From Isurus oxyrinchus (Eukaryota), in the NCBI GenBank assembly GCA_026770705.1, contig JANJGN010000146.1, positions 930,001 to 994,000 of the forward strand: a stretch of 64,000 bases of DNA, in the 5' to 3' direction. Below, piece after piece: positions 15,704 through 58,117 of this stretch. The first letter of the stretch is position 1. Every line of letters starts with the position of its first letter. A program made the translations under genes and the position numbers. The notes beneath the pieces were generated by a model, which saw nothing but the letters and a program-made list of their open reading frames with translations, had not been told where the DNA came from and did no database searches.

Positions 15704-15765
15704 TATTTAATGCAAGAGATCAAACCACCTAATTAACTCCCTGGCGCTTCACATCAGTTATAAAT
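15704..15765 (+). promoter_or_regulatory. Gene 2 proximal promoter module HD-18-HD-2-O/E-11-TATA
   Basis: TATTTAAT (15704-11), 18 nt, TAATTA (15730-35), ac, TCCCTGGCGC (15738-47), 11 nt, TATAAAT (15759-65). ATG at 15816. CRE TGACGTCA at 15368-15375. Confidence 0.7.
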
Positions 15766-15815
15766 GTGACAATCTTTCAGTGCAGTGCAGAAGGCGTTCA
15801 GAACATTTGTTGAAA

Positions 15816-15885
15816 ATGCACGGATCACCAAAAGACCTTCTGTCTGCCATTTATTATCCAGTCCTTGCAGCTCTCGGGGTTCCAG
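15816..15885 (+). CDS. GPR139-like GPCR gene 2, exon 1
   Basis: 70-nt phase-1 exon MHGSPKDLLSAIYYPVLAALGVP G|gtaaag, splicing in frame to 18046. Confidence 0.9.
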
Positions 15886-15984
15886 GTAAAGTATTGTAAT
15901 TAGTATTTTGATACGGAAATCGGTTATCTGCAGGAATTCTACCTTTTAAAAGCATTGTATATCCATAACGTTATACCCATGCTC

Positions 15985-16420
15985 CCAGTTCGCCCTTTAT
16001 CTGTACAATTCTCCCCATTAATGGAGCAATTTCCCTCTTTTAACAAGTATATTTTATCCCTCTAAAAGAACATTTTCCCCACTTTATAGGTATAATGTCT
16101 CAATTTTGACAATATAATTTGTTCCCTTTGCCTAAAAGTCTCACCGCTAATGGCTTAATAATATGCTATTAAAGGTGCAATTCCTCGCTGTTAGTGGCAT
16201 AATATAACATTTTTAAAAGCAAAATTTCACAATTTAAGTGCTATCATATCACCCTGCAAAGTGTGCAATTTCTCGCTGTTAATGGAAAAATATTACCCTG
16301 TTCAGGGTGAAATTTCTCGTTGTTAGCGGTATAATATCCCCCTTATAAGGATGTAATTTTTCGTTGTAAGTGGTATTATATTACTGTCTTCAACGGTGTT
16401 TTGCACCATTTAGTACTGGT
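15985..16420. repeat. Degenerate short-period (~29 bp) tandem repeat at the start of the gene 2 intron
   Basis: Recurrent (gtgc)aattt(c/t)c...gtta..ggtataat units. A related tract occurs on the minus strand in the gene 3 intron (about 34840-35130). Confidence 0.5.
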
Positions 16421-16454
16421 GTATTTTCACACTGTTATCGCAGTGCAATTGCCT

Positions 16455-16850
16455 TTCCATTCTGTTACTGGCATTGTTGCTGAAGGAGAATTATCACATT
16501 GTAATCACGGTGCAAGTGTAATTGTCTTCTGTTACTGCAGGTGTATTTTAACAGTGACATTACAGTCTAAATGTTTTTCCATTGTGTTTCCAGTATCGTT
16601 ACTGAAGGTGAATTATCACATTGCAATCACGGTGTGAATGTGATCACCTTCTGTTACTGACAGTCTAACTAAGGTTGAGTGATCACACTTTAATCACAGT
16701 ATGAATATGTTCGTGTTCTGTTACTGACAGTCGAACTGTGGTTATGTTATCATACTTTAAACGCACTGTGAAATGGATCATCTTCTGTTACTGACAGTCG
16801 AACTGTGGATGAGCTATCACACTGTTTTCACAGTGCAAATGCAAATCTGT
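16455..16850. repeat. 67-bp tandem repeat in the gene 2 intron
   Basis: TTCTGTTACTG anchors at 16460/16527 and 16649/16716/16783, a 67-bp period. Confidence 0.8.
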
Positions 16851-18045
16851 TGTGTTGTTCACATTGACAATGATCGAACAATTCCCACGAATGTTTCATT
16901 GATAGAGAGCAATGTAACATTCAATATTCCCCCAATGAATTTGATGGAAGGACATCATGAGCACCCAGTTTTTGACAGATGTATGAGCAATGTAATAATA
17001 GACTTTTGATGAATATTCTATATTAGCACCACGATCACACAGGTGTGCTTCTGCTCTCAGTCTCCAACACTAATTTGTTCATGATCTGCTGCTGACGCTT
17101 TGACTTGACCACTGTTGACGCCGGAAGTTCCTTCTGCTGATATCACCGGGCAATGTCCCACATTTTCCCGTCTCTGCTGTTTATCCATATTGAATGAGGC
17201 TGCCTACTTGGCTGCATCTTTCACATCTCAGGCGCAATGCTTTGATTTGAAATATCCATTACAGGACAACGTTGATAGTTGATCCCGAAATTGCAGTGCA
17301 GTACGGAGTCAGTGCTGCATTGCAAGAGGGACCTCACTCGGAAGGAGACTTCGGCTTCTGCCATTTCCAAAGGTTCAGATCGACACTGATCTTCCAGTTG
17401 ACTATATGTGAGGAGCTAGGATGTATCTTCACATGCAGGCAAACGCCCTGTCTGGAAGATCAGAAATCATTCATTGCCCCTTTACTCCTCGCTGTATGTC
17501 GATATTTTTGAGCAGGTTTAATTCCCAAAGTTCACAACAATGAATAATTTTCAATAATTATTGCCAATTATTATATAGGAAAGGAACTATATTGATCTTC
17601 AGTGAGATATAATCCGCGCCCTTGTTAGTTTCCACACTTCTTGTTGCTTGTTTTGTTACTTACCTTCGTCATTATTTCCTGCAATGCCTTGCAGATGCGT
17701 ACACTTTCTTGTTGCTTATACAAAAATTCTAGGTTGGTTTCTCAGTGTTAACGATGTCTTTTGTTCTCCATTAGTTTTTATTAAACTATTTGACATTCGT
17801 ATAACTTTGACCTGCCCTATATTGAATTAAGATTTCAATTTACAAAGCTGAATCACTTGCCCATTGCAATTGCGCAACTGGGGACCACATCTGAAATGTA
17901 CAAATTCATGCAGAATCCTATACAATTGTTGATTTCTTTATAGTTTGAGCAGTAACCTTCCTGTATTCGTTCTCTCCCAAACTCACACACACACAAACTC
18001 AGTCTCTTTCCAACTTCTCTCTTTCTCTCTCTCTCTTTATTGCAG

Positions 18046-18956
18046 CTAACCTGGCGGTGATTGTGATCCTTTCTCGAGGGATATGCGGCCTCTCCACCTG
18101 TATAACCTATTATTTACAATCCCTGGAGGTGACAGATCTCCTGCTCATTATAACGGCTGTGATATTGAACCGGATTGCTGGTATTTATTTCCCACTCAGT
18201 TTCCTGTCAATCACACCAGTATGCAGTCTCCGTGAAGCCCTAATATATTCAGCCATAGACAGCTCTGCCTGGTTAACTACAGCTTTCACCTTTGATCGAT
18301 TTGTGGCCATTTGTTGCCATAAGCTGAAAGTAAAATGTTGTTCCAAAAGAACGGCGGCATGGGTTATAGGGACAATCTGCGCAATCAGCTGTTTCAAAAA
18401 CACCTTCCAGTATTTTATATACGAATCTTTGTACATAATTGACAATGTGCCCTGGTTCTGCGATGTAAAAGTGATATTTTATACCTCACTTGCATGGATC
18501 GCCTATGACTGCATTCATCACATTTTAACCCCTTGTCTCCCATTCATTCTGACTTTACTGCTCAATGTCCTGACAGTCAGACACATTCTCGCAGCCAGTA
18601 GAGCTCGCAGGAGACTCCAGACCCGGAGAAATGGAGACAATCAGCGTGACCCTGAGATGGAGAAGCGGAAAAAGTCCATCATTTTACTCTTCTGTGTATC
18701 GGGAAGTTTCATCCTGTTATATTTGTTACTTTTTATAACTTTCCTCTATGTGCAAATTGGAAATGTTAAATACTTATCAAGCTCGGAAATCAATCTTTCA
18801 ACATTCATTCTTGAGGAAAAAGCATACATGCTTCAGTTTTTGAGTTCCTGCGTCAACCCGTTTATTTATGCAGGGACCCAGAGTAAATTCAGAGAAGAGT
18901 TAAAGAATGGGGTGAAATATCCACTACTTGAAATTGTTAAATTATTTGGACGCTAA
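18046..18956 (+). CDS. GPR139-like GPCR gene 2, exon 2 (spliced product 326 aa)
   Basis: Polypyrimidine tract plus tgcag|CT AAC CTG. 7TM motifs VTDLL, FTFDRFVAICC, ICL3 DPEMEKRKKS, TM7 NPFIY. 70+911 nt = 327 codons with no stops. Confidence 0.93.
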
Positions 18957-19669
18957 GGACAGCAAAATCCAACTTCAGCTGTACACAAGATTCCATCCTT
19001 TCCCCTTCTTGTCGATGCCACGCATTGTTCTCCATTCTAGTTCACAGTCACTCAGTTTGAAAATAAGACTGTTAAAGGCGCAATACATCCGAGCACAATT
19101 AAGTGTCAGTATCTGTTCTCTGGTAGTTAAATGTTCTCTTGCCCATATTTTCTGTGGTCTGTCTTATTCCCATCAGAATCCAGGGTCCTTGTAGTCCTCG
19201 TAGTATCTCTACGTTCATGTGGACGGCAAAGTGTCGTATATCTGATTTGTTACCACATTCCAACATGAAATGTTGATAAAGCAACCACAATCTCCCCGCG
19301 TCCCGCCCCAGTAATGATTCTGATCTTGATGGTTGGATACGCTTCGAAATGGATGCACATACTATCCTCAGGAATTGTTCTCCACTGACCAAGCACTGCT
19401 TTACAGCAAACACCTGAGCCCCTAAATATACAAACAGCAGACTGGGGGATTGCGATGGCAAAATACCATCAATTCATCTTCTGCACTTTCCGTTGGCCAA
19501 TTGGGAAGAGTCCCATCTCTAAAGGGGCCCCAAAAATGACCAACAAAATCATTTTTTAAAAAGTTAGAAAACTGCATAAGGACATTATCTTCATTTATCG
19601 TTTATAAATCTTCAGCCGATTTCGTTTCCTACTGTCCTGTTAGCCACGTTGATAAAGGTAGAAGGGATT

Positions 19670-19957
19670 TTTTTATTCATTCAATCGCTAAATGCTCTTG
19701 TTCAGAGAGCATTTAAGAGTCACGTAGAGGCCAGACAGCAGATGCTCTTTCCTGCAGGAAATGATTAAACCAAATGGGCTTTTACAGCAATTAGCAATGG
19801 TTTCATGATCATCATCAGACGCTTAATTAAAGATTTTTATTGAATTCAAATTGCCCAACCTTCCACGGTGGGATGTGAACTTCGGTCACCAGAGAATTAG
19901 GTTGGGCCTTATGCAATGTTAACCTGGTCATAATGCTGCTACACCACCACCTCCCAT
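19670..19957 (-). mobile_element. tRNA-derived SINE
   Basis: Minus strand begins gggaggtggtggtgtagcag (A-box-like), has gttcacatcccacc (B-box-like) and ends in a gaatgaataaaaaa tail. Same family as 49085-49445. Confidence 0.7.
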
Positions 19958-21929
19958 CAGTAGTTAACCGGTCCTACCAATTTATCTTAACAGTTATTCG
20001 ACAACAGGCCCAGACGTGATCAACAATAATGTCAGTGGATAGCTTCAATATTCGGGGCGCGAAATTAGTTGTAGCAGTGGTACCGATATTTAGCTGTGGT
20101 TTGCTGAGGCACCGTCTACCATGACCCAGAATTCCATTTGTGAAAGAGGCCTGTGGGAGTATGCCCCGTATTTGCCTGAAAGAGATGAATCGATGTTACA
20201 CTGAAGTCACACATCCTGACGACTGAGGTGATGGCAGTATACCGAATGTGGACTAGAAAACGCATTAATACATCATTCGGCAAACAGAAGCTCCAGTTCT
20301 GCAAAACTGACACTCCACCAGTATTTCACAATGGGCTTGGTACCTTAATATCATGGAATTTAATTTGGAGGAGTTCTCCTGTCACAAACTATTTGGTGTT
20401 ATTAAGGCTTGTTTTTGGAGGCCTTGTGGTTGGTTTCTGGATTTCCCAGATGACTGTTCTGCAGCCTGTAAGGAGAGGCAGCAGATCTGATGATGTGTCC
20501 TCGGGGCCAACGATGCCTCTGGACCAGCAACGTTACAGCTGAAATGCAGTGTCGGCTATGAAGAGACGATGCTCTGGCAAATGCAATCTGTTCAAATGGA
20601 GCCAGACTCTTTAATGCTCCTTGACAGCGGCAGGAGTTGCCATTGCATTGTATGAACCAATATTAAGAATCTCACTCTATCTACTGACAATACTCAATAG
20701 AACCATTTATCAATGATCTGGTGGGCAGGATTTTGGGGTGTGCATAGCGTGAAATGCAAGCGAGTTTAGTTGACACTTAATGGATTCCAGAGAATAACAG
20801 GATGTTGGTGCTGCAGTGTTGCTTTGTAATGCAGTAGGGGCCAACAACTCGGCAATTTGGGCTGATTGGCGAGACGTTCCATTCGTTTTCATTTTGGGCG
20901 GATGCTGGATGACACTGACACTGCTCAGGAGCACATTCGTCTTTCGAAAGGCAGGTTCAGAAAGAATTTGACGAATTTATTAGTCGGGTTGTCTCGTTAT
21001 TTCCGTTGCATCAATTAATCCATTGTAATTCCCAATAAGATCAGTCGTTATTTTTTTCATGTTCTCCTTTACAAACTAGATTTTTTAAAAACTTATTCAA
21101 CAGGAAACATTACCCCCATGATATCTTACAATATCTTTAAAAGTTGCACTTTTCTCACGTTATGATGTTGAATGTTAATGAAGCATGTTGACATTGAATG
21201 TCACATGACAATCTAGAAGCCCCCATGCAAATTCACCACAGAGACATTTCCTATCCTGTGTGAAAATCATTGCTGCATTACAATCAGTCAGCCTAACATT
21301 GCCGCCAGGTGAACGTCCAGTGAGCAGAATCGGGGCAATTTTAATGGTGAATTTGAAGATTTTCGGTTAATAACCGACAGCTAACATGGATTTGTAATAA
21401 GGCAAAATAGACAAACTTGACTGAACTTTTCTCTGAAGTAATAGACTGGATGGTATTCGTGGATCCCAATGGTTTTGCATCGTGAAGCAAGTTAACACAG
21501 TCTCCCACAAGTATCGGTGTCAATTGTCATTTGTGATATCTGTTAGTCATATGGACACGGGAACAAAGGGTAAAAATTTAAGCTTTGCCGATAGCACAAG
21601 ACATGGATCTGGAGAAAACTGTGTGCAGGCTAGTTGACATAATTCAGGAAAGACAGCTGGAATGCCAGGCGCATGAGATATGGAATTTACTGCACAAAAT
21701 ATGATTTGGAATGCTTTAATTGGAAATAAATCGAGTTGGGAAGCAACATAACCCAACAGGCTAGAAACTTCGGTGATGCCAGTACAGTGGTGTATATTCT
21801 GGAAGGAGGGCCTTGGGAGTTCTCAACATCTGCTGTGGAATCCATCAAGTCTCATGACATCAGAGAACATTAAATCAAACATGGATAAGGAAAACTACTG
21901 CTATTAGATATCAGACATCCAGAATCCAA

Positions 21930-23710: not shown

Positions 23711-24189
23711 ATCGTGTTTCATATTCCGCAGCTGATGAAAGCTTCCTTTATAAATCTTCAAACCATCAACATGAATATCGATAGTTTATGGTGAGACGGG
23801 ATTCCCCTGTCAGATCCATCCTGTCTGCCCAGAATCTAACATTCACACATTCTGTCCTTGAAAGAGCTGCAGTCAGAGAAATCATTGTCTACCTCTTTCT
23901 GGAATGTGCTTTTGGGAGAAGGTCTGGAAAATGATGGTCCAGCTTCATCCCGATCAGCTCCATAAAACAGGATTTTGTTCTCTCCGGGCCGAGATTATAA
24001 TCCTTTGTTTGTACTTAACAGTTGTACCCTCCAATAATACTTCCAATAACATGCACGCCCTGCAAATACATTGAAACAACGCTCTCACTTAGAAACTGAG
24101 TTAAGTGAATGATTTTCCAAGCATTTCCATCACATATTATGAAAGAAGATGAGATTCCCCAACTGATCACATAAGTGATAACACCCAGA

Positions 24190-27910: not shown

Positions 27911-27919
27911 TGTCAGGGG

Positions 27920-29085: not shown

Positions 29086-29089
29086 AGTC

Positions 29090-33030: not shown

Positions 33031-33941
33031 TCATCTTTTAAATAATTTAACAAGCAGGTTCAGTGGGAATTTCACACCATTCTTTAACTCTTCTCTGAAT
33101 TTACTCTGGGTCCCTACATAAATAAACGGATTGATGCAAGAATTCAGGAGCTGAAGCATACGTGCGCTTTCCTCCATAAGAAAATTTGATTCGTTGAAAT
33201 TGGTAGAGTCTGCATAGCTGAGATTCGCAATTCGGACATAGAGGAAGTTTATAAGTCTTAACAAATGTAACAGGATGAAACTGCCCGAGATACAGAAGAG
33301 CAAAACCATGGATTTCCTTCTCTTCTGCATCTCTGGATCACTTTGATTCTCTCCATTGCTCTGGATCCGGAGTCTCCTGCGGGCTCGACTGGCCGCTACA
33401 ATGTGTCTGATGGTCAGAGCATTGAGCAGTAAAATAAGGAAGAAGGAGAGGCAAAGGGTTAAAACGGCGATTATGCTTTCATAAGCGACCCATTCAGGTG
33501 CCGTATAAAATATTGATTTTGAATTGCATTGCCAGGGTATATTGTCAATTATAAAGGCAGGCTCACACATAAAATACAAGGGAATGCTTTTAACGCAGTT
33601 AAGTACAGAGACAGTTCCTATCACCACAGCCGCCATTTTCTCAGTGCAATATTTAATTTTCAGCTTCTGGCAGCAAATGGCTACAAATCGGTCAAAGGTG
33701 AAAGCCACTGTTACCCAGACAGAAGAATCGATGACTCCATAATTTAGCACAAGTCTGAGGCTGAAGACCGGAGTGATGGCCAGGAGACTGAACGGGAAAT
33801 AAATACCTATAATCCGGTTTAATATCACAACTGTGATCCCGACAAGAAGATCCGTCACGGCCATGGACATCAAGTAGTAAGTAATACATTTGGAGAGACC
33901 GCATCTTCCTCGAGTCAGTATCACAATCACGACCAGATTAG
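33031..33941 (-). CDS. GPR139-like GPCR gene 3, exon 2 (spliced product 326 aa)
   Basis: Acceptor gtcacag|CT AAT CTG. Motifs SMAVTDLL, FTFDRFVAICCQKLK, DPEMQKRRKS, NPFIY. 911 nt, the same length as gene 2 exon 2. Confidence 0.94.
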
Positions 33942-35187
33942 CTGTGACAGCGAAACGCAGCCAGCGAATAGCCAATTTTGAGAAAGAAATTTAGAACATA
34001 AAATGTTGGAAATTCTCAGTCAGGCAGCAGTTGAAAAGAGAGGAACAAGTTAGCATGTCAGAAAGATGATCTGGAGGAAAATATCCTAAAACACAGCAAT
34101 CTGTTCTGTACTGTTAGCAACACTAAGGGCTAACTCAAGGTGAGCATTGAACATCCTGCATTGTGACCCTGAAATACAGTCAATGTTGTTCTCATTCAAC
34201 GTTTAGAGACGGGAAAATATAACAATACTCTGAAACATTGGAAAATCGAAGGTTAACAAATACATTATAGAGCTTGAAAAAAGTTCAGCAAAAAAAAAAC
34301 TACTACTTAACTGAAAAGTAGATGAAGGAGATGTGATGCATCTGAGTTGTAACAATTAGAAGTTAAAGGAACAAGGCTTCACAGCCACGAGTAAAGCTAA
34401 TCATGCTTACTATGGCTCAGTTTACAGCAATCTCACTTTTTAGTCAAAAGGTTTAGCGTTCAAGCCCAACTGTTGGACTTCAGCAACATTGCACTGCCGG
34501 ATATGCTACATTTCAGCTAAAACAAAAGACTGAGGACCGGTAGTGAATACAAAATCTTACTTAAGAAATTGCTGTTATTCACATTCCAGCGCAAGGAGCA
34601 ATATATGCACATGGCAAAGTGAGGTAATTCAACAGCTGTGTCAATAACACCATAGAGCTACATTTACAGCGTGATAAATCAGCCATGGTGACAGTGTCAA
34701 TAATACAATTGATTTACATTGCACTGTGATATTAGTGTGCTAAATACTTCGCCCACATTAATAATGACAATAACAACATCTAATTATGTTTAGACTGAGA
34801 GGCGGCACTGCTAAGTTGGGAGAAAAGATTTAGTTAAAGAGATGAAACGGCATTGGTGAAGCAAACATAGTAATCCCTGAAATGGAAGTAAGTATAGTGG
34901 CAATGGGAAGAAACTGTTCTCGTGAAGGGGAGAAATTGTAGCCTTAAAGTGGAGAAAAGAGACCAGTAATGACCAGTAATATTGCAAGGAAAGGGAAGGT
35001 TTAATCTCATTTAAAAGAAGAATGCACCAAACGTGGAGATAAGGATACTGCAAAAAAGGGAAAACATTATAAAAAAACAAATTATCCTGTTAATGGGGTG
35101 AACCATAGAGAAGCAGTACAGCTAAATTAAAGAAGTGATAGAGTGAAAAATGATTCTGGTAACTGGTAACTAACCCTAATACTTTAC

Positions 35188-35257
35188 CTGGAATACCGAT
35201 AGCTGCAAGAACGGGATAGTAAATGGCGAACACCAGACCTTTTGGTATCCCATGCAT
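35188..35257 (-). CDS. GPR139-like GPCR gene 3, exon 1
   Basis: 70-nt phase-1 exon MHGIPKGLVFAIYYPVLAAIGIP G|gtaaag. An alternative in-frame ATG lies at 35264-35266. Confidence 0.92.
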
Positions 35258-35307: not shown

Positions 35308-35369
35308 ATTTATACATGATGTCGGACTCTAGGGAGACAATGAGAAGGTTTGGCTTTTTACATTAATTA
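35308..35369 (-). promoter_or_regulatory. Gene 3 proximal promoter module HD-18-HD-2-O/E-11-TATA
   Basis: Minus strand: TAATTAAT (35362-69), 18 nt, TCATTG (35338-43), tc, TCCCTAGAGT (35326-35), 11 nt, TATAAAT (35308-14). Confidence 0.7.
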
Positions 35370-35649
35370 CACTAACTGAAAAAAAAACATTTTAGTGCAG
35401 CTGCTGCCACGCTCACGTTTATATTTTTGATGGAATGGAATCTGTTTTCAAGTACATTGGCGCGACAGGAGAGTACGGTCTAAGTTGCATTTTTTCCTAA
35501 AATTTAAATAACAAGCCAAATAAGCCATTGTAATTGTGAATGTGAGCACTGTGCACGAGCATCCATGGCTTTAAACCCCGCAGGAAAACATTACAAAGTT
35601 CTCACCCTTGATCATTTTTCAGCCCGTGTGTACACGGATCACGTGTAAT

Positions 35650-37150: not shown

Positions 37151-38479
37151 TTTTGCCTCTACACTTACATTAAAACTGTTCCATCTGTAACTTTTGACTG
37201 ATCTGATGAAAGGTCACATGCTGCCGGATATCTTGAGTATTTCCATCGTTTCCTGTTTAATTCCATTTAGGGTATTTATATTCAGTGTAGAAATGTGCAG
37301 CTCGGCACGGTTATATTCACAGTGCACACGCCTGGTTTGGCACGGTTACTTCCATTGTGGACTAGTTCAATTCAGTTAGTGTAGCCATGTCAATCCCGGC
37401 AATAACGAAAGTGCACAGGTGTGTGAATTTACATTTTGTGTGGCAAGATCCAGCTCAGGACGTGTGTGCTTCGTGCTTTCAGTCTAAGCTCAGTCCACTC
37501 ACATTCAGAGAAGACAACCTCCTGTTGAGCATGATTAAATTAATGATGGAGCGCTCCAAATCAACATGGTTATATACCATGTAGAAAGTCCTGTTCAGCT
37601 CGTTAGCAATCACTGTTTAGTGGAAAACCAGTTTAGGGGATTATCACGCTGGTGTGACTGTCCAGTTCAGTAAATTGCATTCACTGCATTCAGGTTAAAT
37701 TGTGCACATCTCCACTCAGTACGAACAGGCCAATTTCTATCCTGTTACACTAAATGTACATGGACGACTTTTTGCCCGATTATTGTCAACTTTGTCCGGT
37801 GGAACACAACTACGTACAATGTGCACAGCCCCGGCTCTGAACACTTTCTTTCTTGCAGTGGAAAATTTCACTTCAGCGTGATTACATTCCATATAGAATA
37901 ATCAATTTCATTACTGCTGTATTCGATGGAGACAGGACTGGCCGAGCATGGTTATGTTTCGTGTAGATTTATGAAAGTCTGCTCGGTGCTAATAAATGTG
38001 TACAAGGACATTTGCATTCAGACTGGACTGGTTTAGTTCTGCATTCTTACTTTTAATTTGAGCTTCTGTGGTTCACTGTGGTGGACAGTCCCAATTGATC
38101 ACTGTGAACCTTTTAATTTCCCAGCAGCTATGCTTCGTGTGCAGATGTCTTGATCAGTGAGGTTACATTCAATTTGCGTAATTGCAGTTCTGGAGCATGA
38201 TTTTCAGTGCAAGACTGATCTCGGCCGGAGAGATTTTATTCATTGTGATTTTCCACGACAAAATCTAGGTCTATTGTTACTGATAAAGGAAGGTTCATAG
38301 GCAAAAGTACCAGGGGATGAGGAGGTTCTGGAGACTTTGGAATTGTCTTCTCCAGAAAACAAGAGACGGCAGGGGCAATAAATATATTCAAGGCATAGTT
38401 AGACAAATTATTGATCGACAAGAGATCCGATGGTTACTCAGTCTGGCAGGAAAACGGAGTTAAAGCCAGGATTACATCA

Positions 38480-39350
38480 GTCATGAACTCCGATGGGTAT
38501 TACACAGCGTTGACAACAAAATGCATCTTAGGAGAATTGAATGGAGCAGTTAACAGCAGCAACAGAGTTAAAAGTGCTCTTCATAACAGTTAATCGATTG
38601 CAACTATTTGATAAATTTACGAATAAACATGTGGAGGGTAAACAAAAATATGGAAAAATACATACCACTATCATTTATAGTTTCACGCCAATTAGAAAAT
38701 ATGCTGATCTGTAATGGTTAAGCTCAAATCGCCACAAAACAACACCCTCCCACAAATTATATTCCTTCTCCCACAGTTTGCTCTTTCAGTTATCCAACAA
38801 CAACCCTTCGCAATGTCCTCTTCTTAACCAAAATATTTACTGTATCACATGGCTTATTTTTGGCAGCACTTTGGATACAAAACTTACTGTTGCTTCCTTT
38901 TGAGCCTTCTAAATACGGTGAAAAGCTGAGACCCAAATACAAATCGTGCGAATCAGCTGTCACCCCTGTCAATTGAACTGTATTCACATTACCGATCAAC
39001 AAATTAAATGAGCTTTGTACATACCACAGCCATCGCGAGTTAAATTTATGTCGATATCAATTTAAATTAACATCTAGGCATGTAAAATAAATGACCTGTT
39101 TAACTAAGAAATTCTGGTTTTAATGACATTATTGAAGTAACAATTAAACTACATTGTGCAGCATTTGTATCATTACCAAAACGTCCGTCAACACAAGACA
39201 CAGAAATCGCGGACACGCATAGAACCATCTTGAATGTTTTGCTGTTGGAGGACAGCCAAACATCCGGAGAAGCTAGACAGTAAACATCTGACCCTCATGC
39301 TTCACAGTTGAACAAACATTGAAAAGACCTAATTCCGGGAAAAAAAACGT
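38480..39350 (+). repeat. ~870-bp direct duplication, copy 1
   Basis: Colinear with 40355-41240, e.g. ccactatcatttatagtttcacgc and ttggatacaaaacttactgttgcttc. Confidence 0.92.
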
Positions 39351-40354
39351 ATAATTCAGATTCAGAATGTTTCCGTTTCGTATTTTGAGTGGCTCAGGAA
39401 ACTGACTGGAAAATAAACAGCCGTAAACCGGCTTAATACCAGTGTAATGATAATTACTTGGAGATCTGTCACCGCCATGGACTCTGCGTATCTGGAAAGA
39501 CCACATCTTCCTCGGGAACGGATCACGATAGTCAACAAGTTAGCTGTAAGGGAGAGAGAGCGAGAGAGAGAGAGAGGAGAGACAAGGGAAGAATTAGTGC
39601 TGAATCTCCCAGCTACAACGTCCGTTTGGCGGGAGAATGGTATGGCACATGGACCATCAATACTTCATTCAACGCTGGAACTGATTACTTTGCCAATGTA
39701 TTAATGCTGGTCCATTTTTTATTTATATTGTCGCAGATGAAGTGGAAGTCGGAATATAAAATGACACAAAACACTACTTTCCGACTGATGTAAATTTTAT
39801 GTAATCTAGAAGTAGAAGGAATTGATCTTCATTAAATTGACAAAAGGACAACCTGAGAATGGCATAAAAATACAGATAAAAGTTCAGTACATTTATTCAT
39901 TTATAAATACAGTAAATGATAACATTATGAAACGTTAAACCGCTATAACAATGAAAGCAATCGAATGACAGGACATAAGATATGGGTAATAACGAATTCC
40001 TAATAAATATCAGAAGGAACCAAGGTACGATCAAAAAGAAAATTTGGACTTTGCCCCTGTGGAAACAAGTCAAAGCGCATCAAAGGCTTTTTTGCAGTTC
40101 AGTGATTGCAGTAGTGGAAGATCAGGTCTCGCAGCAGTAGTGTGGATTTTCAACTGATAAAACAGCAAGGCCTTGGCTTAGAGCCTCGTCAGAAGGACGA
40201 CAGAATATACAGTGCTGGACAATCTCAGGGGCATGAAGCTCGGCTACGGACACGAGATCGGAAGTAGGGATCAAACCCAGGGCTTTCCGAATGATCACTG
40301 AGGTTTCAAAATTTAGTTGAGCGAAATAAAGTGGCTATGAGCATAATGAATTCC

Positions 40355-47447: not shown

Positions 47448-47486
47448 AGTTATTGTACAAGTGTCGGGCTGGTTCTAATTGCTGTG
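47448..47486 (-). other. 23-RSS
   Basis: CACAGCA (47480-86), 23 nt, ACAATAACT (47448-56). Confidence 0.85.
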
Positions 47487-50476: not shown

Positions 50477-50515
50477 AGTTTTTGTACCAGTGGTAAGGAT
50501 TTATGTAACGTGGTG
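50477..50515 (-). other. 23-RSS with non-canonical heptamer
   Basis: CACCACG (50509-15), 23 nt, ACAAAAACT (50477-85). Confidence 0.75.
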
Positions 50516-50823
50516 CTTCATAGCCGTGCAGTAATACACGGCTGAGTCAGAGAGCTGGGTGTCTGTGATGTTCAAAGGGATGTTTGTGTTGCTCCTATCC
50601 TGTACGGCTGAAAAGCGCTTTGCAAAAGCTGGTGCATTCTCTTCATTCCCAGCCGTGTGTCTGAGCAGCACATACTGAAGGCCTTTTCCCGAGTACTGTA
50701 CATACCAGAATAGGTAAGCAGTTGTGTATGTCGCTGGGTAGATACATGACAACACCGCAGTATCTCCTTCACTCACTGCTACAATTGAGGGTGTTTGGGA
50801 AAGTCTCTCCTGTTGGGCGCATT
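50516..50823 (-). CDS. TCR alpha/delta-type V segment, V exon (open)
   Basis: Acceptor ttttccag|AA TGC. QERLSQTPSIVAVSEGDTAVLSCIY..YLFWYVQYSGKGLQYVL..RFSA..LNITDTQLSDSAVYYCTAMK, with both canonical Cys and the Trp present. Confidence 0.93.
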
Positions 50824-51292
50824 CTGGAAAACAATAACAGAATGTTATCAATGCAACTTTTAGATTTTTTTCATTCGGACAAAATAATCTTTCCAATGCA
50901 CACGCACACGCGCGCACACACGGGCTCAGGTTAAATCATTCCCTTCAATACAACGGTTGACTGCATTTCGAGTGTGAACGACAACAACAAAAACAGGGAG
51001 CTTCAGCGATTTCACCCCTCAGTTAACTGATCCCAGGCCATCATCGGTGTAAATTGCTTCTGGCAGTGTTCAGCCAAGGCTACCGTTTCTGCAGGAAATA
51101 GAGAAGCCCTTCTCCGGCCCGCTGAGACAATGACAGGTCAGCTTGTGACTAATTTAGATAATGTACGAACACTCACTGACCAGTGAGCGAAGTCGAGGAA
51201 GCTGACCTCATCAATGGAGTGAAGAAAAATTGGAGGAAAAATAACAATACAGTTAACAAAATAAAAGCGTTACAATCGCATGAAATACTTAC

Positions 51293-51353
51293 TTGGTTGA
51301 ACATTTATGAGGAAAAGGAACACTTTGACGACACACTGGCGATCAGAAGACAT
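51293..51353 (-). CDS. Putative leader exon of the V segment at 50516-50823
   Basis: 61-nt phase-1 exon MSSDRQCVVKVFLFLINVQP A|gtaagt, splicing in frame to the V exon. Confidence 0.65.
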
Positions 51354-51469
51354 GTTGAAGTTGTATCCTGTGCCAGAATTTCATGCTGTACGGAAGTATG
51401 TGATGTATATTCAAGACATTTGTTACATCCTACCACCACGTTTAGCTGCACATGAGTATGACTCCGAGA

Positions 51470-51525
51470 TTTATAAACAACACAAAAATTGCAAATGGAA
51501 GTTTCCTCAGTTTGATGTCTCCCAG
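51470..51525 (-). promoter_or_regulatory. Possible V-gene promoter
   Basis: Minus strand: AGACATCA (CRE/decamer-like), GAGGAAACTTCC (Ets-like) and TTTATAAA, about 120-170 nt upstream of the leader ATG. Confidence 0.35.
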
Positions 51526-51859
51526 CAGCCGATAGGTGCGATGCTGGCAGGGGTGGGGCAGACAAACAAAGGCAACGAATCAAAATTTAAAAAATCCAAA
51601 TTCATATCTATAGCCCGGCCTCAATATCGAGGTACATCAATGGCATTTGTTCGTTAATAGACACAATTGATCTTTAATATTTCATTAACTCCAATAAATG
51701 CTGTTCCTTACCAGATGCAAGTTGTGTGATGGACACCAATATAACATTGGTGTCATGGACACTCACATAACAATCAACACTGCGCATTGTTATTCAATGC
51801 AGAAAGAATACACTTTGGTTTTTGTTCGGACAGAACTTCAGTATTTCTGAAAAAGAGAC

Positions 51860-52075
51860 AGGTCTCAGCTTATCACCCTGCACTCATCAGGAAACTTGCA
51901 AGAATAAAAATACATGGGAGGGGGGAGCACAATTTATACTGTATGTGAGGAGAATGATGATTGGTTGGCAAGTGGCATTTTCCTGAATAATGCACCACCT
52001 ATGGCGAAGGACAGTTAACTGCCAAGAATTGTTTGAAATTTAAGCCAGACAGCTTGACCCTGATAGGTTCAGGCT
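51860..52075 (-). mobile_element. Second PLE-type terminal repeat remnant
   Basis: Minus strand cctgatgagtgcagg (degenerate hammerhead core) within an interspersed-repeat-like segment. Confidence 0.4.
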
Positions 52076-55000
52076 GACTCGTTTCTCATGATGATGAAGA
52101 AGAAGATGAAGATGATATTGCTGATCTAACTGGTTTGCTCTCCGGAGGTCCGGCAAAGACTGTGTATGTCGAATGCCTCCCTCCCCGCCCCCACCATTCC
52201 GCACCCCCCCCCCAACCCCGCCACCACAGCGCCCCCCTCCCCTCCTTTCCGGCTCCGTGCTGTAATGAGACTGGTGAATCTGGTTGCACCAATCTATGGC
52301 AGAGCTACCCAGCCCCAGTTAGGTGGACCAAAACTGAGCACAGTTCTCCAAATGTGTTGTTAGCAAAATCTTATATATTTGCAGCAAAGCTTCGTTACAC
52401 TCCTTATCCAAACCTCTTGCGACGGCTTCACAAACACTGTTGATTAGTCTTTGTTATTAACCAGTTTGAACTGAGAAAAAAAAACATAAAGACGTTGTTC
52501 TCCTGCATATTTTTGGCTTTTCCCTTTCTCTCTGTACGTATTTAATTCGAAGACTGACAGAGAGCTATAGATACAAAATGGCAACTGAAAAAAACACTAT
52601 GTTCCTCCGAGTACTGAATTAAAAGTGAGGGATGGATTTAGTCTTCATTGTATTGAATCGGAGCTAATCCATTGCACAGCTATGAATTCCATGTCAGAGC
52701 AATAATCGATCAAGAAACAACCCTGGCCTAATTAAGCAGAGCAAGAGCGAGAATATTCATCACACAGAGAGATCAAGGCGAGCAAATGAGAAAAAAAAGA
52801 GCTAAGGATAGAGACAGAGTCAAATAGACAGAGATAAATTGAAGGAGAGTCCTAGACAAAGGAAAGGGAAACAGGCATAGAAACTGACAATTAATGGAAA
52901 GAAGCTGTACATTCATTTCACAATTCCATCTCATTATTCATTCATAGTTACTGGGAGACAGCACCTTCTGAAATTATATAAAGTCCTTCAATAGTTCAGA
53001 GTGTCCCAGGTTGCTTAACGACAAGGGCGTATCTAGTGAAGTATAGTCACTCCTTTAATCTAGTGATAGAGTTAGAGGAAAATACAGAATCTGTTTAAAT
53101 AACATCTTAAGAAAGAGATATAAACGTGATTTTTTCTTTCCATCTATTTACGATGCTTGATGAAGATCCAGGAAATGTAAAGGTCTTTTGAATTTTCAAC
53201 TTCTGCTCTGTTAAAATTTCACTCATACAGCATGAAATTCACAGAAATTTGGAACAAAGAATCAGGCCTCTAAACATTCTCCAATCAATAAGATGTTTAA
53301 TTTTTTTATGTTCTAAAAGCGCAAGGAGAAGTTAAGGAAGTTAAACAATTATAATGAAATCCTTTGAATGATTATAACTGCTGCAAGCTGGAGGGGTCGT
53401 TGGATACCCGCTTCTTAGTTTATTGTCAGAGAAACCAACGGATCTATGATCAAAGGTAATTAACAGCTCTCAGTTACTCTCAGGCAGCATAAATCATGCT
53501 TCCTGCTCCAGTGAATCTTGTCATCTGCTACTTGATGACATAGTTTAACCGTAGACCGCAAAACGTTAAACGAAAACTTATGTGTCACATTCCCACCTCC
53601 TTGCATAGGAAGAACCAGATTAAAATAACCTGGCATCAAGGCGGAGATAAACAGACTCTTGGTCAAAAAAAAATGTTGAAGATCTGAACTATAATAACAC
53701 AGGCAGGCATGTGCACAGATACTTGTCAAAGAGGCTACACAAACAAACACACACACGTACACACATAGGCGCGCTTGCACACACGCAAACACGCACGTAC
53801 CCACACAACCACATGCATTTCGACATCAACACGTATGTATCTGTATATATTTTATGTCGTTTTAAATGGAAATAGAGGCGGACAAACTGCAAGAACATTG
53901 GCTGCTATTTTGACTTATTTTATTAATGCACAGTCTATCAAAATGGAGAACCCAACAACACTGTCAGGGTGCAAGGAGGAGGGGAGTAAACATTGCTCAT
54001 ACACCCGTGATACCACCACCACCGTGTATCGCTAGTGGTGGCGCTGCAGTTGTTCCCTCAAACAGTTCAGGTTCATATTCACTTAACAAACGTTTACATT
54101 CAAGCAGTTACCAAGACCATAAGGATCCCCAAACACAGGCTTTTATGCCTAACATTTCAGAAGGCACACACAACAGTATTAAGTTGATTTTTTATATACC
54201 GCTTGGTGATGAATATCAAGGTCACATGCTCAACGACTATCTATTACTCTTTGGTCCAGTGACTGATCAGTTACCAGTCACATCTGTGTCCACAATTAGC
54301 TACACGTGACGGCTGGCTAAGTTAGTTAAATAGAAGATACCAGTACAGGCATGAACAAGGAGCAATGGATGGTGAGGGAAATCCTCAATTTACATAATTT
54401 AAAAATGCTTGCAAATCTCCAGACTCTGAACAGCATCTTTCAACTCATGTCACTCAAAAATAAATAGAGTAAACTGGATAGATTCTAGAATAATTTTAAT
54501 TCTAAACACCAATCGTTACTCTTCCAGGGGCTTGAAACTATTTTCGTGTTTGCAAATTTGATGCCAATTCAGTTTCTTTCTGGAAGCTATTGTAATATTT
54601 TCGATAAGCAACCAATTGAGGTCCGAAATTGCTCTAAGACTTCGATAGCTCAAACTATGTGACACAATAGTGACCTAACAGCACAGGAAGGACTTCAAAT
54701 TCCCATGAGTCAATTTTCAAAACGTTCTATATCCTCTTTTTCTAGAGTCATATAATGATGTAAATTATAGATCAGGCATTTTTTTCTCTCTAAGAGATAT
54801 TCTGAAAAAATATATCTATATATTCCAGTGCCCTCCCCCCATTACTCAAGGACGTTCGTGTCTCATTGTGAAGGGCAACTATGCACAGCCCATCTCAGAG
54901 CTGGAACAGGTGCATGATATCCCTTTCGCAGTGAAATTTGCTGGTTGAAATCCCACAGAAACGCCAAACAGATATTTGACCTCTTAACAATGTGAATACT

Positions 55001-55527
55001 CTAGTGCATAAGCAGAAAGTAACGCCTGGCCACAGCCCGGACTGTTGCATGTCCACTCTTTGATATCGCTGTGTCAATGAGTCACCAAGTGAAATGGAAG
55101 ATTGAAGTCATTGGGAGTGGGTAACAGCTACTCACCGGTGTGGTTGTATGTATGAGACAGTATTGAGGAGGGGCAGTAGATCTCTTCTTGCTCTTACTGT
55201 ACCTGAATGCAATTATGCCTTCATTGGTGGAACGTGTGAGTGAACTTGGATCTAAATGGTGATTAAGCAATTAAGCCGCATCGCTTGGTCTGCATAGAGC
55301 CACTAGAACCTCAGCAGGTTGGACAGTAGGTGAATTCTCTCCTGCACACATGGCAGGCTAATTACACAGCCCAGGTGTGGACTTATAGGTTTCTCAGCAG
55401 GTTATGAATTCTGAACCCATTTCCAAAGCAAAATGGACTCAAATTAAACTCTCAATTCTCCATCACGCTATAGAGAGTGCAGTTTATGATGAAAGAGATG
55501 GGGGTTTTACCAATGGCCACTAGGTCA

Positions 55528-56420
55528 AAGGGAGGAGTTTTGTCCTCATCGGGCGGACACAGAGAGGTGGACAGGAGCTTTCCGGAACGCGACTGCCAGC
55601 CCGTGATCAGGGCCGAAAAGCGATTTCACGCTGGCTGGTCAATTAAGGGCCACCCCGCGTGAAACTCAGCTGGTGACAGGTTGGAGGGGCCGAGCGGGAA
55701 TGGGAGCCTCTCGGCCGGCGGGTCCAATGGCGATCCGGCCGCCAGTTTGAAAACGGCCCAGGCAGCCCCAGGAAGGCTGCTGGAGAATGACGTCTGTCTG
55801 CTGTTGCAAAGATAGACTCCTGTGCGGCAGCAAACACCAGGCGGGAGGGCATGTTGTTTGGGCATTCGGCCCCCAGTTATACTGAGGTGTGCCTCGCTGA
55901 CCTCATGGAGGGCGTGGCTGCCAGAAGGGACACCCTTGTCCGAAGAGATGGAAGGAGGACGCCTTCCAAACCTCACAAAGAAGCATTGGGAGGAAGTGGC
56001 AGCCTCGGTGAACAGCCATAATGCACACCTGGGTGCAGTGCTAGAGGCGTTTGATTGACCTGCTACACTCGGAAAAGGTGATTGCTGTGTTGGCATCAGT
56101 CAGTGTGTGGAATTGTTTTGAACTAGCCGCCCTCCCCATGCAGTTCAGCGTGTCAGAACCTGAGTCCTAACTGTCAATCACTCCGGCTCTGGCCAAGTTG
56201 CTGAGCTTTGGCTGCTTTGACTGAGTGCCATGCGAATCACCGGCCATGATATGGATGTGGCCTGCAAGGCGCCCCAATGCTGGGGTTCGTCAGGCTGTAA
56301 TGGTGCTGCATGTTGGATGTGGACTAATGAATGCTCCTCTGTGCTTTCAGGAGAAGGCAGCCCGTAACAACATTGAGAGGCCACGGACTGGCGGAGCACC
56401 CCCACACCTTTCAACATCGC
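55528..56420 (+). mobile_element. Harbinger/PIF transposon remnant (Myb/SANT-like gene relic)
   Basis: APSYTEVCLADLMEGVAARRDTL..TKKHWEEVAASVNS..TWVQC*RR..DL..K|gt, intron, then ttcag|EKAARNNIERPRTGGAPP. Frameshifted. Confidence 0.78.
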
Positions 56421-58055
56421 TGTCTCTGGCAATGTTGCAGCCTCCAGCCAGGTCTCCCCTTGCTGTGATCATCTCCGACTATGGAGGGTTGTATCTATAA
56501 ATCATTCCTCCTCTGCTCCCTTAGCTTGGCCATACCAGACATTTAAATCAGGGTTGAAAAAACCCTGAAGATGACAAAAGTTTTAATTCTTTAAGCAAAC
56601 ACTCAGAATTTGAACCGAATTCTGATGACAAATACGTTTCCTTCACTCCACCTTGTTCTAAAATCTCAACTGAGCTTCAGTGATCCTCAAGTGATACATA
56701 AGGTCTGTTACCACTTAGAAATGCAATTTAACTACCGGTTAGCTCCAAAACTTACCTTAATCTTGGGAAACTACGTAACAAGCTTTTTATTTACTGGAAT
56801 AACTTCAAAGGTCCTGCCTCCTTGTCCTTAGCTAATTAAAAGCGCCCACATTATCATGATCTTGTAATTTTAGCTGTGAGCCTCTTAAGTCAACATGGCT
56901 CCAAACTTTTAAGAATAATAAACTTCAAAGTTGGTTAAATTGCATTTAATGTACGGCTGCTTTTACCAGTTTTTGCCACCAGATATCCCCACTGCCTACA
57001 GCTAAATCTTTAATTCCTAAAACTAACAATTGGATTGAAAATCAGCTGAATTATGACACTAGCCATGGGTAACAGAAGGTGAATTTTTCACCGCAGTATC
57101 AGGTACAAATTTACTATTAAACTGGTATACCAGTTCCAAAGTCACAGTTAGACCGGGGCATCAGGTACATGTTCACGTTCAAATTGGGGTATCCGGTACA
57201 AAGCCACTGTTAGACTGAATTATCAGTTAGAATAGCACTGATAGACTGGAATGTCATGTACATGGTCAATGTAAGATCGGGATATCAGTTACAACTTCAC
57301 TGTTGTACTCGATTATCAGTTACGGTGAAGTTTCGGGTGCAAGGCGAATAGGATACCATATTTCAATTCCATGGTCACCGTTTGACAACAGTATCTGTAG
57401 GAAGCCCACTGATGGACCTATGCATAATTCAAATGAGCACTGTATGACCAGGTACTAGTTGCATGGTCACTGTAAGTCCGTGGTGTCAGGTACAAAGTCA
57501 TTTTAGATTGTGTAGTGTCATTCACATGGACACTAATATTCCATGGATTTCAATTACAGGGTTTAGTTACAACGGGGCATCATTTTCCAGGTCAGCTTTA
57601 AAGTTAAACTCTCATCATTTCCATGGTAATTGTTGATCCATAGCATCAGTTTTACGTTTACTGTTAAACCAAGCAGTTTCAAATCATCAGTCTATAATTT
57701 CCCTTTCTGATCACTAGACAATGATCAACTATGCATCCTTTTGGACAGTTACTGCTTCTGTCCATACTCTGGCACTTGTGTTCACCCCCTGAGAAATTAA
57801 TTGAAACCATGAAATTGTTTGGCAGCATTTTATCTCCGGAATAATCAAAGCTCTGGATTTGAGTCTGTTTTTCTTTTCTTATCTGTGCTGCAAGCCTGCA
57901 GAATTCCATAACCTGTTTATCACAAAAGTGGCTGACGTCACGTGCTTGCTTTGAATAAATTATCTTGACAGGAATGCCATGTAGTTTTTAGTATATTTTT
58001 TCCATACAAAGTGATGGGATGAAAGGGTTAAGGCATCTTGTTTGTTAAGTGACTG

Positions 58056-58117
58056 TAATTAATGCCAGCCAGTGTATTGTTTAATTGAATCACCAGGACT
58101 CTCCTCCGCCTATATCT
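58056..58117 (+). promoter_or_regulatory. Gene 4 proximal promoter module HD-18-HD-2-O/E-11-TATA
   Basis: TAATTAAT (58056-63), 18 nt, TAATTG (58082-87), aa, TCACCAGGAC (58090-99), 11 nt, TATATCT (58111-17). Upstream: CRE+E-box TGACGTCACGTG (57933-44) and CCCCCTGAGAAATTAATTG (57785-57803). Confidence 0.65.

What the first reader, a model, noticed from the sequence alone, without database searches (positions are those of the whole stretch)
15704..58117. All four GPR139-like genes share a rigid olfactory-receptor-style promoter (HD-18-HD-2-O/E-11-TATA): candidate unrecognised shark chemoreceptor family
Seen in sequence: gene 2 gTATTTAATg..TAATTA-ac-TCCCTGGCGC-11-TATAAAT (15704-15765); gene 3 gTAATTAATg..TCATTG-tc-TCCCTAGAGT-11-TATAAAT (35308-35369, minus); gene 4 gTAATTAATg..TAATTG-aa-TCACCAGGAC-11-TATATCT (58056-58117); gene 1 gTACTTAATg..AAATTG-aa-TCACTGGAGA-12-TATATCT (7189-7252, minus). 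The 18-nt and 2-nt gaps are identical in all four, although the spacer sequences are unrelated between subfamilies. That pattern implies selection on motif and spacing. Established knowledge: mammalian OR promoters and enhancers are defined by homeodomain (Lhx2/Emx2, TAATTR/TAATGA) plus O/E (EBF, TCCCNNGGGA) sites, including an adjacent Lhx2-Ebf composite. Chondrichthyans have very few canonical OR genes, and mammalian GPR139/GPR142 respond to aromatic amino acids. Inference: this duplicating, pseudogenising GPCR family may be an amino-acid-type chemoreceptor repertoire expressed in olfactory neurons under OR-like control.
Basis: partly seen in the sequence, partly recalled or inferred. Interest (0 to 1): 0.88.

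Follow-up and report, generated by a model that had tools for sequence, protein, structure and literature searches.

The report
Conserved homeodomain-TATA promoter of shark GPCRs
Four neighbouring shark receptor genes of a very large, poorly described family carry the same short promoter layout, which looks truly conserved, but nothing here shows that it is an olfactory-type promoter or that the genes work in the nose.

Summary
The quoted strings and spacings are in the window exactly where stated, and the derived pattern hits only those four places. The sample is smaller than "four". Genes 1 and 4 are one 7.6-kb inverted duplication (83% identity throughout). Gene 1 is a pseudogene whose two homeodomain sites are both mutated.

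There is real constraint:
- In genes 2/3 only -191..+88 around the ATG is alignable (65-70%, almost gap-free). Flanks and intron are at shuffle level and dS is 0.83.
- Across subfamilies (dS about 1.07) a 20-nt block ending in GTAATTAATG (17/20), an AATT core, the TATA box and the spacing survive. The spacers are random.

The "O/E" element is not supported. It matches 5-6 of 8 consensus positions, which is chance level, and 5/10 positions are conserved across subfamilies.

In the literature, rigid HD+O/E composites mark OR enhancers, not promoters. The main block fits Brn3a/POU4F as well as Lhx2. GPR139 is only a remote best hit.

Expression could not be tested. Other first readers noted similar modules elsewhere in this genome; those notes are unchecked.

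The parts
15703..15765 (+). Gene 2 promoter module: GTATTTAATG 15703-15712, TAATTA 15730-15735, TCCCTGGCGC 15738-15747, TATAAAT 15759-15765
15625..15815 (+). Gene 2 conserved non-coding island (-191..-1 of the ATG), homologous to 35448-35258 of gene 3
   Evidence: 65% identity with 2 gap runs; flanks at shuffle level
15816..15885 (+). Gene 2 coding exon 1 (23 codons plus 1 nt; donor GT at 15886)
18046..18956 (+). Gene 2 exon 2 (rest of the 7TM receptor, intact)
35308..35370 (-). Gene 3 promoter module: GTAATTAATG 35370-35361, TCATTG 35343-35338, TCCCTAGAGT 35335-35326, TATAAAT 35314-35308
35188..35257 (-). Gene 3 coding exon 1
33031..33941 (-). Gene 3 exon 2 (intact 7TM receptor body)
58055..58117 (+). 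Gene 4 promoter module: GTAATTAATG 58055-58064, TAATTG 58082-58087, TCACCAGGAC 58090-58099, TATATCT 58111-58117
58208..58304 (+). Gene 4 coding exon 1 (32 codons plus 1 nt). An out-of-frame upstream ATG lies at 58200.
63572..64000 (+). Gene 4 exon 2; open as far as the window goes and runs off its end
7189..7252 (-). Gene 1 (pseudogene) promoter module with both HD sites mutated (GTACTTAATG, AAATTG) and a 1-nt insertion before TATA
6999..7095 (-). Gene 1 exon 1 with in-frame TAA at 7029-7027
830..1707 (-). Gene 1 exon 2 with two in-frame stops, one of them in the NPxxY region
56559..64000 (+). Segmental duplication unit holding gene 4. Its inverted copy is 8825-1279 (gene 1), at 82.7% identity over 7.6 kb.

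Best explanation
The four sites are the proximal promoters of a two-exon, shark-expanded class-A GPCR family. The promoter was copied along with each gene duplication. In intact genes purifying selection has kept:
- a roughly 20-nt AT-rich homeodomain/POU-type element ending in GTAATTAATG;
- a second AATT-core homeodomain site 17 nt downstream;
- a TATA box 23 nt after the second site;
- a TTTCANTG block 9 nt after the TATA box;
- the spacing between these elements.

The likely mechanism is inferred, not shown. One or two homeodomain-class activators (LIM-HD, POU-HD or a similar class) bind at fixed geometry upstream of TBP/TFIID. Transcription would start about 30 nt after the TATA box. This would restrict the whole family to one differentiated cell type, most probably a sensory neuron population. 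I put chemosensory cells of any kind at about 0.4, with olfactory neurons about 0.25 of the total. An EBF (O/E) contribution is not supported beyond chance.
For: - The motifs are present and unique to the four promoters.
- Each module lies 50 nt (genes 2, 3) or 90 nt (gene 4) upstream of the ATG of a short first coding exon. Its peptide (MHG..KGLVFAIYYP.LAAIGVP) begins most annotated shark homologues.
- In genes 2/3 the conserved non-coding island is only -191..+88. The module is 70% identical with no gaps, and -191..-114 is 66% identical. The region -591..-192 and the intron are at shuffle level.
- dS between genes 2 and 3 is 0.83 and pS is 0.50, so the island is more conserved than silent sites.
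- Between subfamilies (dS 1.07) the first HD block matches 17/20, the second HD site 5/6 and the TATA box 5/7. The spacers match 3-5/17 and 3/11, with no indel in 63 nt. The adjacent 5'UTR needs three indels.
- The pseudogene copy has substitutions in both HD cores.
Against: - No transcription start site, RNA or tissue evidence could be obtained.
- The effective sample is two lineages plus one pseudogene.
- The gene 4/gene 1 promoter identity (87%) is not distinguishable from their neutral 83%, so the decay of the pseudogene's HD sites is anecdotal.
- TAATTA-type sites are bound by many factors, so the activator and cell type are guesses.
- The paralogue contigs laid pile up on exon 1 but not on the promoter bin. 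At the 80% level the promoter is therefore not conserved family-wide.
Confidence: 0.62

Rival explanations
1. One reading: an olfactory-receptor-like promoter. Lhx2/Emx2-type homeodomain factors and EBF bind an adjacent composite (HD, 2 nt, O/E). This would drive sparse expression of an unrecognised amino-acid-type chemoreceptor repertoire in olfactory neurons.
For: - HD sites and a TATA box near the start resemble mammalian OR promoters, where O/E, HD and (in a subset) TATA are enriched.
- A YYYY-NN-RRRR-like string sits 2 nt from the second HD site in all copies. Published composites tolerate pyrimidine/purine runs in place of CCC/GGG.
- The family looks chemoreceptor-like. 2011 proteins reach E<=1e-10 and the 120 listed are all from sharks. 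There are tandem copies and pseudogenes. Variability is concentrated on the extracellular halves of the TM bundle, 1.07 against 0.55 bits.
- Sharks have very few OR/TAAR/ORA genes.
Against: - The O/E strings match 5-6 of 8 positions, which is chance level.
- Only 5/10 O/E positions are conserved between subfamilies.
- HD+O/E pairs occur in the window at the shuffle rate, 4 against 4.2 and 19 against 13.4.
- The composite is enriched in OR enhancers and not in promoters.
- The GPR139 relationship is remote.
- No indexed RNA run of this organism holds gene 3. This is weak evidence because the tissues are unknown.
Confidence: 0.22
2. The same conserved promoter is driven by another homeodomain class, for example POU4F/Brn3, LIM-HD/Isl or Nkx6-type factors. 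Expression would be in a non-olfactory cell type: somatosensory, lateral-line or electrosensory neurons, taste or solitary chemosensory cells, or brain nuclei as for true GPR139. This would parallel lineage-specific GPCR expansions in somatosensory neurons such as the MRGPRs (comparison from general knowledge).
For: - GTAATTAAT is an 8/9 match, on either strand, to the published Brn3a optimum ATAATTAAT. [quoted passage not shown]
- The HD block is the best conserved element, while the O/E part is not conserved.
- Several small shark 'olfactory' receptor families are in fact expressed outside the nose.
Against: - There are no expression data.
- Gene 2's block (GTATTTAAT) matches only 7/9 positions of the Brn3a consensus AT[A/T]A[A/T]T[A/T]AT.
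- TAAT-rich sites do not discriminate between homeodomain classes.
Confidence: 0.3
3. The shared strings are residual homology from duplication, with no regulatory function. Alternatively, they are kept alike by gene conversion.
For: - All four upstream regions are homologous.
- Genes 4 and 1 share the module at the same identity as their introns.
Against: - Between subfamilies the silent sites are saturated (dS 1.07) and the spacers are random, yet a 20-nt block keeps 17/20 and the spacing is intact.
- In genes 2/3 the island ends sharply at -191, and the flanks and intron are unalignable.
- A conversion tract would also homogenise the spacers next to the conserved block.
Confidence: 0.08
4. 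The genes are expressed in lymphoid or other immune cells. The reasoning is that they lie among TCR V segments and EBF1 is a lymphocyte factor.
For: A TCR-type V segment with a 23-RSS lies between genes 3 and 4.
Against: - The EBF-like string is at chance level.
- Homeodomain-plus-TATA promoters are not typical of lymphocyte receptor genes (general knowledge).
- Mammalian OR genes also sit beside TRA V segments without lymphoid expression (general knowledge).
Confidence: 0.05

Closest known systems
Mouse V1R promoters (Stewart and Lane 2007, PMC1955453)
   Same: The promoter region is well conserved within a subfamily. It is not alignable across subfamilies by ordinary methods, yet short shared motifs sit near the start sites. 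The promoter is inherited with each duplication in a large tandem chemoreceptor family (here).
   Different: The V1R conserved regions are about 1 kb and have mapped start sites. Here the island is about 190 nt, no start site is mapped, and the cell type is unknown.
Mammalian OR proximal promoters (O/E plus homeodomain sites, TATA in a subset; PMC3247239, PMC12547500)
   Same: AT-rich homeodomain sites lie within about 120 nt of the presumed start, with a TATA box.
   Different: In OR promoters the strongest signal is O/E, and no fixed spacing is described in the passages read. Here the O/E-like string is at chance level, and the HD sites and spacing are what is conserved.
Greek Island composite Lhx2/Ebf motif of OR enhancers (Monahan 2017, PMC5608512)
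   Same: A homeodomain site lies directly beside a pyrimidine-NN-purine string at a fixed distance.
   Different: The composite marks intergenic enhancers, often several per element, and is depleted in promoters. Here there is one copy per promoter and no enrichment in the window. The published spacing could not be read from the text, so it was not compared.
Brn3a/POU4F1 recognition element ATAATTAAT in sensory-neuron genes (PMC2829025)
   Same: [quoted passage not shown]
   Different: No binding or co-expression evidence exists. Gene 2 matches less well.
GPR139/GPR142 receptors
   Same: GPR139 is the best solved-structure match. It is a class-A 7TM receptor with DRF and NPxxY motifs.
   Different: The score is only 38.6 bits (E 7e-9). 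NCBI names for the family vary: GPR139, capa-receptor-like, GPR15-like, FMRFamide-receptor-like. It is a many-member, shark-only family among the listed hits rather than a conserved single-copy brain receptor.

Membership tests
Mammalian-type OR proximal promoter | Homeodomain (TAATTR/TAATGA-type) site within about 200 nt upstream of the start | tested here: met
   Two HD-type sites per promoter. The first is conserved 9-10/10 across subfamilies.
Mammalian-type OR proximal promoter | O/E (EBF) site near the start, above background | tested here: not met
   The strings match 5-6 of 8 consensus positions. A match of 6/8 or better is expected by chance in 42% of 100-nt stretches. Conservation between subfamilies is 5/10.
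Mammalian-type OR proximal promoter | Transcription in olfactory sensory neurons, sparse and one receptor per cell | not testable with these tools
No RNA run holds the gene and sample names are coded. The runs laid were genomic DNA.
Greek Island Lhx2/Ebf composite | Adjacent HD and O/E sites at a stereotyped distance | tested here: inconclusive
   A fixed 2-nt gap is present in all four copies. The O/E half is weak, and the published spacing is not given in the accessible text.
Greek Island Lhx2/Ebf composite | Located in intergenic enhancers, enriched there over promoters and background | tested here: not met
   The sites sit in promoters. Composite-like pairs occur in the window at the shuffle rate. 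The literature states depletion in promoters.
V1R-type family-conserved promoter | Promoter conserved within a subfamily well beyond its flanks | tested here: met
   In genes 2/3, -191..-1 is 65% identical with 2 gap runs. The regions -591..-192 and the intron are 47-51% identical, the same as shuffles.
V1R-type family-conserved promoter | Short motifs shared across divergent subfamilies next to the start site | tested here: met
   The best ungapped match is 37/63 against a shuffle maximum of 35. The matches fall in blocks: first HD, second HD, TATA and TTTCANTG.
V1R-type family-conserved promoter | Mapped transcription start inside the conserved region | not testable with these tools
   No RNA reads were available.
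GPR139/GPR142 clade | Clear closest similarity to GPR139 (orthology-level) | tested here: inconclusive
   GPR139 is the top solved hit but scores only E 7e-9 and 38.6 bits. The next hits are at 1e-5. Source names are inconsistent.
GPR139/GPR142 clade | Activation by aromatic amino acids | not testable with these tools
   This needs a heterologous assay.
Vertebrate chemoreceptor multigene family (operational) | Large lineage-specific expansion in tandem arrays with pseudogenes | tested here: met
   2011 proteins reach E<=1e-10, and the best 120 are all from sharks. The 64-kb window holds four copies plus a fragment, one copy being a pseudogene.
Vertebrate chemoreceptor multigene family (operational) | Sequence variability concentrated around the ligand pocket | tested here: met
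   Entropy is 1.07 bits on outer TM halves against 0.55 bits on inner halves (p 4e-8, 94 sequences). The helix limits agree with the secondary structure of a low-confidence model.
Vertebrate chemoreceptor multigene family (operational) | Expression in a chemosensory epithelium | not testable with these tools

The most novel reading that the evidence does not exclude
The shark-only 'GPR139-like' family, apparently hundreds of genes per genome, is an unrecognised chemosensory receptor repertoire, olfactory or otherwise. It would be switched on through a family-wide homeodomain (plus possibly EBF) promoter code. That would fill the gap left by the tiny OR/TAAR/ORA repertoires of cartilaginous fishes.
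Probability: 0.2. Interest if true: 0.85.

Novelty: new member of a known kind. Interest (0 to 1): 0.5.

Why it matters
[quoted passage not shown] A class-A GPCR family with thousands of members across shark genomes, pocket-centred variability and a conserved, compact promoter is an obvious candidate for some sensory or surveillance role. I found no paper in the searched library that describes it.

The promoter module gives a concrete handle for three kinds of work:
- a short motif set to test family-wide;
- a small fragment to use as a reporter;
- candidate factors to test.

As it stands, the finding is a well-supported conserved promoter joined to an untested hypothesis about cell type.

Tried and rejected
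The family-wide motif test could not be run.
- The look-up of sequencing runs in RNA mode gave no RNA holder, and run, sample and study names were coded, so no tissue could be read.
- Read laying on four holders showed genomic DNA contigs covering introns and flanks, so it said nothing about transcription. One 1271-nt 'joint' (33912 to 35184) does not sit on the splice sites, and I take it as a paralogue alignment artefact.
- The metagenome scan for relatives returned only proteins 23-51% identical over their best segments (25-32% for the near-full-length matches). I take these to be invertebrate-host GPCRs. None was shark DNA.
- Supplementary expression tables of the catshark 'Sensory Shark' paper are not held.
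- The text of the Greek Island papers does not spell out the composite sequence or gap.
- The only perfect O/E palindrome in the window (7536-7545, upstream of pseudogene 1) is not conserved in gene 4. I rejected it as evidence.
- The AlphaFold model was of low confidence (pLDDT 47.5). I used only its helix limits and ran no fold search.
- The Atlas search added only family names.
- The spliced (exon 1 plus exon 2) protein was not joined or searched. Exon 2 was searched by reference, and exon 1 was checked by tblastn of database proteins against the window.
Full report
WHAT IS THERE

The window holds four copies of a two-exon rhodopsin-class GPCR gene and one fragment.

| Copy | Strand | Exon 1 | Exon 2 | State |
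|---|---|---|---|---|
| Gene 2 | + | 15816-15885 | 18046-18956 | intact |
| Gene 3 | - | 35257-35188 | 33941-33031 | intact |
| Gene 4 | + | 58208-58304 | 63572 to the window end | open as far as seen |
| Gene 1 | - | 7095-6999 | 1707-830 | pseudogene |
| Fragment | - | none found | 39544-39392 and 38314-38249 | fragment |

Gene 1 has a TAA at codon 23 of exon 1 (7029-7027). It also has two in-frame stops in exon 2, one of them inside the NPxxY region.

The short first coding exon (MHG..K.L....YYP.LAA.G.P) matches the N-termini of most annotated shark homologues. The two-exon layout, and hence the position of the promoter, is therefore a family trait. Exon 2 was searched by reference, and exon 1 was checked by aligning database proteins to the window.

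THE OBSERVATION

All four quoted strings are at the stated places. The pattern GTAHTTAATG-N17-WMATTR-N2-TCMCNNG finds exactly these four sites in 64 kb even with two mismatches allowed. Shuffles give 0.01 expected hits. The pattern was built from these sites, so this is a post hoc test.

- The gap to the TATA box is 11 nt, and 12 nt in gene 1.
- Each module lies 50 nt (genes 2, 3) or 90 nt (gene 4) upstream of the ATG.

HOW MANY INDEPENDENT OBSERVATIONS

There are two, not four.

- Gene 4 and gene 1 belong to one inverted segmental duplication. Positions 56559-64000 match 8825-1279 at 82.7% identity over 7.6 kb, intron and upstream DNA included.
- Their exon 2 has dS 0.12 and omega 0.80, as expected if gene 1 is drifting.
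- The gene 4/gene 1 module identity (about 87%) is the neutral level.
- Both homeodomain cores are hit in the pseudogene (GTAATT to GTACTT, TAATTG to AAATTG). This fits relaxed constraint but is a single case.
- Genes 2 and 3 are older paralogues (dS 0.83, omega 0.29).

IS THERE CONSTRAINT

Yes.

Within genes 2/3:
- Sensitive blastn aligns only 15625-15904 with 35448-35169 outside exon 2, apart from three 60-88-nt patches in the intron.
- With one global-alignment procedure for all regions, -191..-1 is 65% identical with 2 gap runs. The module is 70% identical with none, and -191..-114 is 66% identical.
- The regions -391..-192, -591..-392 and two 200-nt intron stretches are 47-51% identical with 8-13 gap runs. 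That equals shuffled controls.
- Silent sites differ at 50%.

Between subfamilies (gene 3 vs gene 4, dS 1.07):
- blastn finds no promoter alignment.
- On one common diagonal, 37 of 63 positions match for gene 3 vs gene 4 and 35 of 63 for gene 2 vs gene 4. The shuffle mean is 29.6 and the shuffle maxima are 35 and 36.

| Element | Cross-subfamily matches |
|---|---|
| 20-nt block ending in GTAATTAATG | 15-17 of 20 |
| Second HD hexamer | 5 of 6 |
| TATA box | 5 of 7 |
| TTTCANTG block 9 nt after the TATA box | partly conserved in all four copies (conservation line; not scored as a separate segment) |
| First spacer | 3-5 of 17 |
| Second spacer | 3 of 11 |

There is no indel in these 63 nt, whereas the adjacent 5'UTR needs three indels in the four-way alignment. 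With random spacers next to conserved blocks, gene conversion is an unlikely cause.

THE O/E ELEMENT

This is the weak part.

- Against TCCCNNGGGA the four strings score 6, 6, 5 and 6 of 8.
- In this window a match of 6/8 or better is expected in 42% of 100-nt stretches, and 5/8 or better in 98%.
- Only 5 of 10 positions agree between subfamilies, and 4 are invariant in the three intact genes.
- HD-plus-O/E pairs within 0-4 nt occur at the shuffle rate: 4 against 4.2 for strict HD, 19 against 13.4 (sd 4.5) for loose HD.
- The one perfect O/E palindrome (7536-7545) lies upstream of the pseudogene and is not shared by gene 4.
- One point in favour: published composites tolerate pyrimidine and purine runs at a fixed distance from the Lhx2 site. 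The strings here are roughly YYYY-NN-RRRR. EBF is therefore not excluded.

COMPARISON WITH OR REGULATION

- OR promoters are AT-rich and enriched for O/E and homeodomain sites. A subset has TATA boxes.
- The stereotyped, directly adjacent Lhx2/Ebf composite is a hallmark of the Greek Island enhancers. It is reported as enriched there relative to OR promoters, and a 2025 review says it is 'not found in promoters'.
- The closest published parallel is the mouse V1R family. Its promoters are well conserved within subfamilies and unalignable across them, yet share short motifs at the start sites.

WHICH FACTOR

GTAATTAAT is one base from the Brn3a/POU4F1 optimum ATAATTAAT. [quoted passage not shown] The same letters also hold a generic TAATTA core that fits Lhx2-type and many other homeodomain proteins (general knowledge). 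Sequence alone cannot choose between them.

THE RECEPTOR FAMILY

- Exon 2 of gene 3 finds 2011 proteins at E<=1e-10. The best 120 are all from sharks: Heterodontus, Heptranchias, Stegostoma, Rhincodon, Scyliorhinus, Carcharodon, Chiloscyllium, Mustelus and Pristiophorus.
- The top identity is 74%, and the source names are inconsistent.
- GPR139 is the best solved relative, but only at 38.6 bits. 'GPR139-like' is a label, not an orthology, and its aromatic-amino-acid pharmacology cannot be carried over.
- In an alignment of 94 family members, variability is concentrated on the extracellular halves of TM3-TM7 and on ECL2/3: 1.07 bits against 0.55 bits on inner halves, p 4e-8. The helix limits agree with the secondary structure of a low-confidence model.
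- Together with tandem copies and pseudogenes this is chemoreceptor-like, but it is equally what any ligand-diversifying receptor family shows.

EXPRESSION

Expression could not be tested.

- No RNA run on record holds gene 3, and run and sample names are coded.
- The four holders laid were genomic DNA. Contigs cover introns and flanks, and hundreds of paralogue contigs pile up on exon 2 and, less so, on exon 1, but not on the promoter bin.
- Earlier follow-ups in this genome report public RNA for other genes. The blank here is therefore a weak hint that gene 3 is not abundant in whatever tissues were sequenced.

Published catshark work is not encouraging for an OR-type (ciliated-neuron) programme.
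- All olfactory neurons appear microvillous (TRPC2 and Go positive).
[quoted passage not shown] - Low, sparse expression would not show up in such a list.

I found no paper in the searched library that describes this family.

VERDICT

It is best described as a family-specific homeodomain-plus-TATA proximal promoter inherited by duplication, like V1R promoters. The 'olfactory-receptor-style, Lhx2+EBF' reading and the olfactory, amino-acid chemoreceptor function remain untested. I give them about 0.2-0.25.

Other first readers flagged similar modules next to paralogues elsewhere in this genome. I could not check those notes, and they are not independent evidence.

Noticed in passing
window 50477-50917 (-): A TCR-type V segment lies between GPCR genes 3 and 4. 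It has a V-set domain (E 2.7e-16) ending in YYC. A recombination signal follows: heptamer CACCACG 50515-50509, a 23-nt spacer and nonamer ACAAAAACT 50485-50477.
   Followed up: partly
window 15368-15375, 57933-57940, 7366-7373: All three perfect CRE palindromes (TGACGTCA) of the window lie upstream of family genes. They sit at -448 of the gene 2 ATG and -275 of the gene 4 ATG (overlapping a CACGTG E-box), plus the gene 1 copy. None lies upstream of gene 3. Two independent sites in such positions is suggestive but was not tested further.
   Followed up: partly
window 7536-7545: The only perfect O/E palindrome (TCCCNNGGGA) in 64 kb sits about 285 nt upstream of the pseudogene's promoter. The homologous gene 4 sequence does not match.
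   Followed up: yes
window 38249-39544 (-): A GPCR pseudogene fragment in two pieces (39544-39392, 38314-38249). No exon 1 or promoter module was detectable upstream.
   Followed up: partly
window 58200-58248 and 7103-7055: An upstream ATG lies 8 nt before and out of frame with the main start codon of genes 4 and 1. It opens a short overlapping uORF that is conserved in both copies.
   Followed up: no
window 15781-15788, 35292-35285, 58133-58140, 7173-7166: A TTTCANTG block 9 nt after the TATA box is partly conserved in all four copies (4 of its 8 positions are invariant). It may mark the initiator region.
   Followed up: partly
L001-L023 (metagenome contigs): JGI metagenome contigs encode GPCRs 23-51% identical over the best segment (25-32% for the near-full-length matches) that share the FTFDRF (TM3) pattern. 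I take them to be invertebrate host DNA. They show that the family's closest non-shark look-alikes are distant.
   Followed up: no
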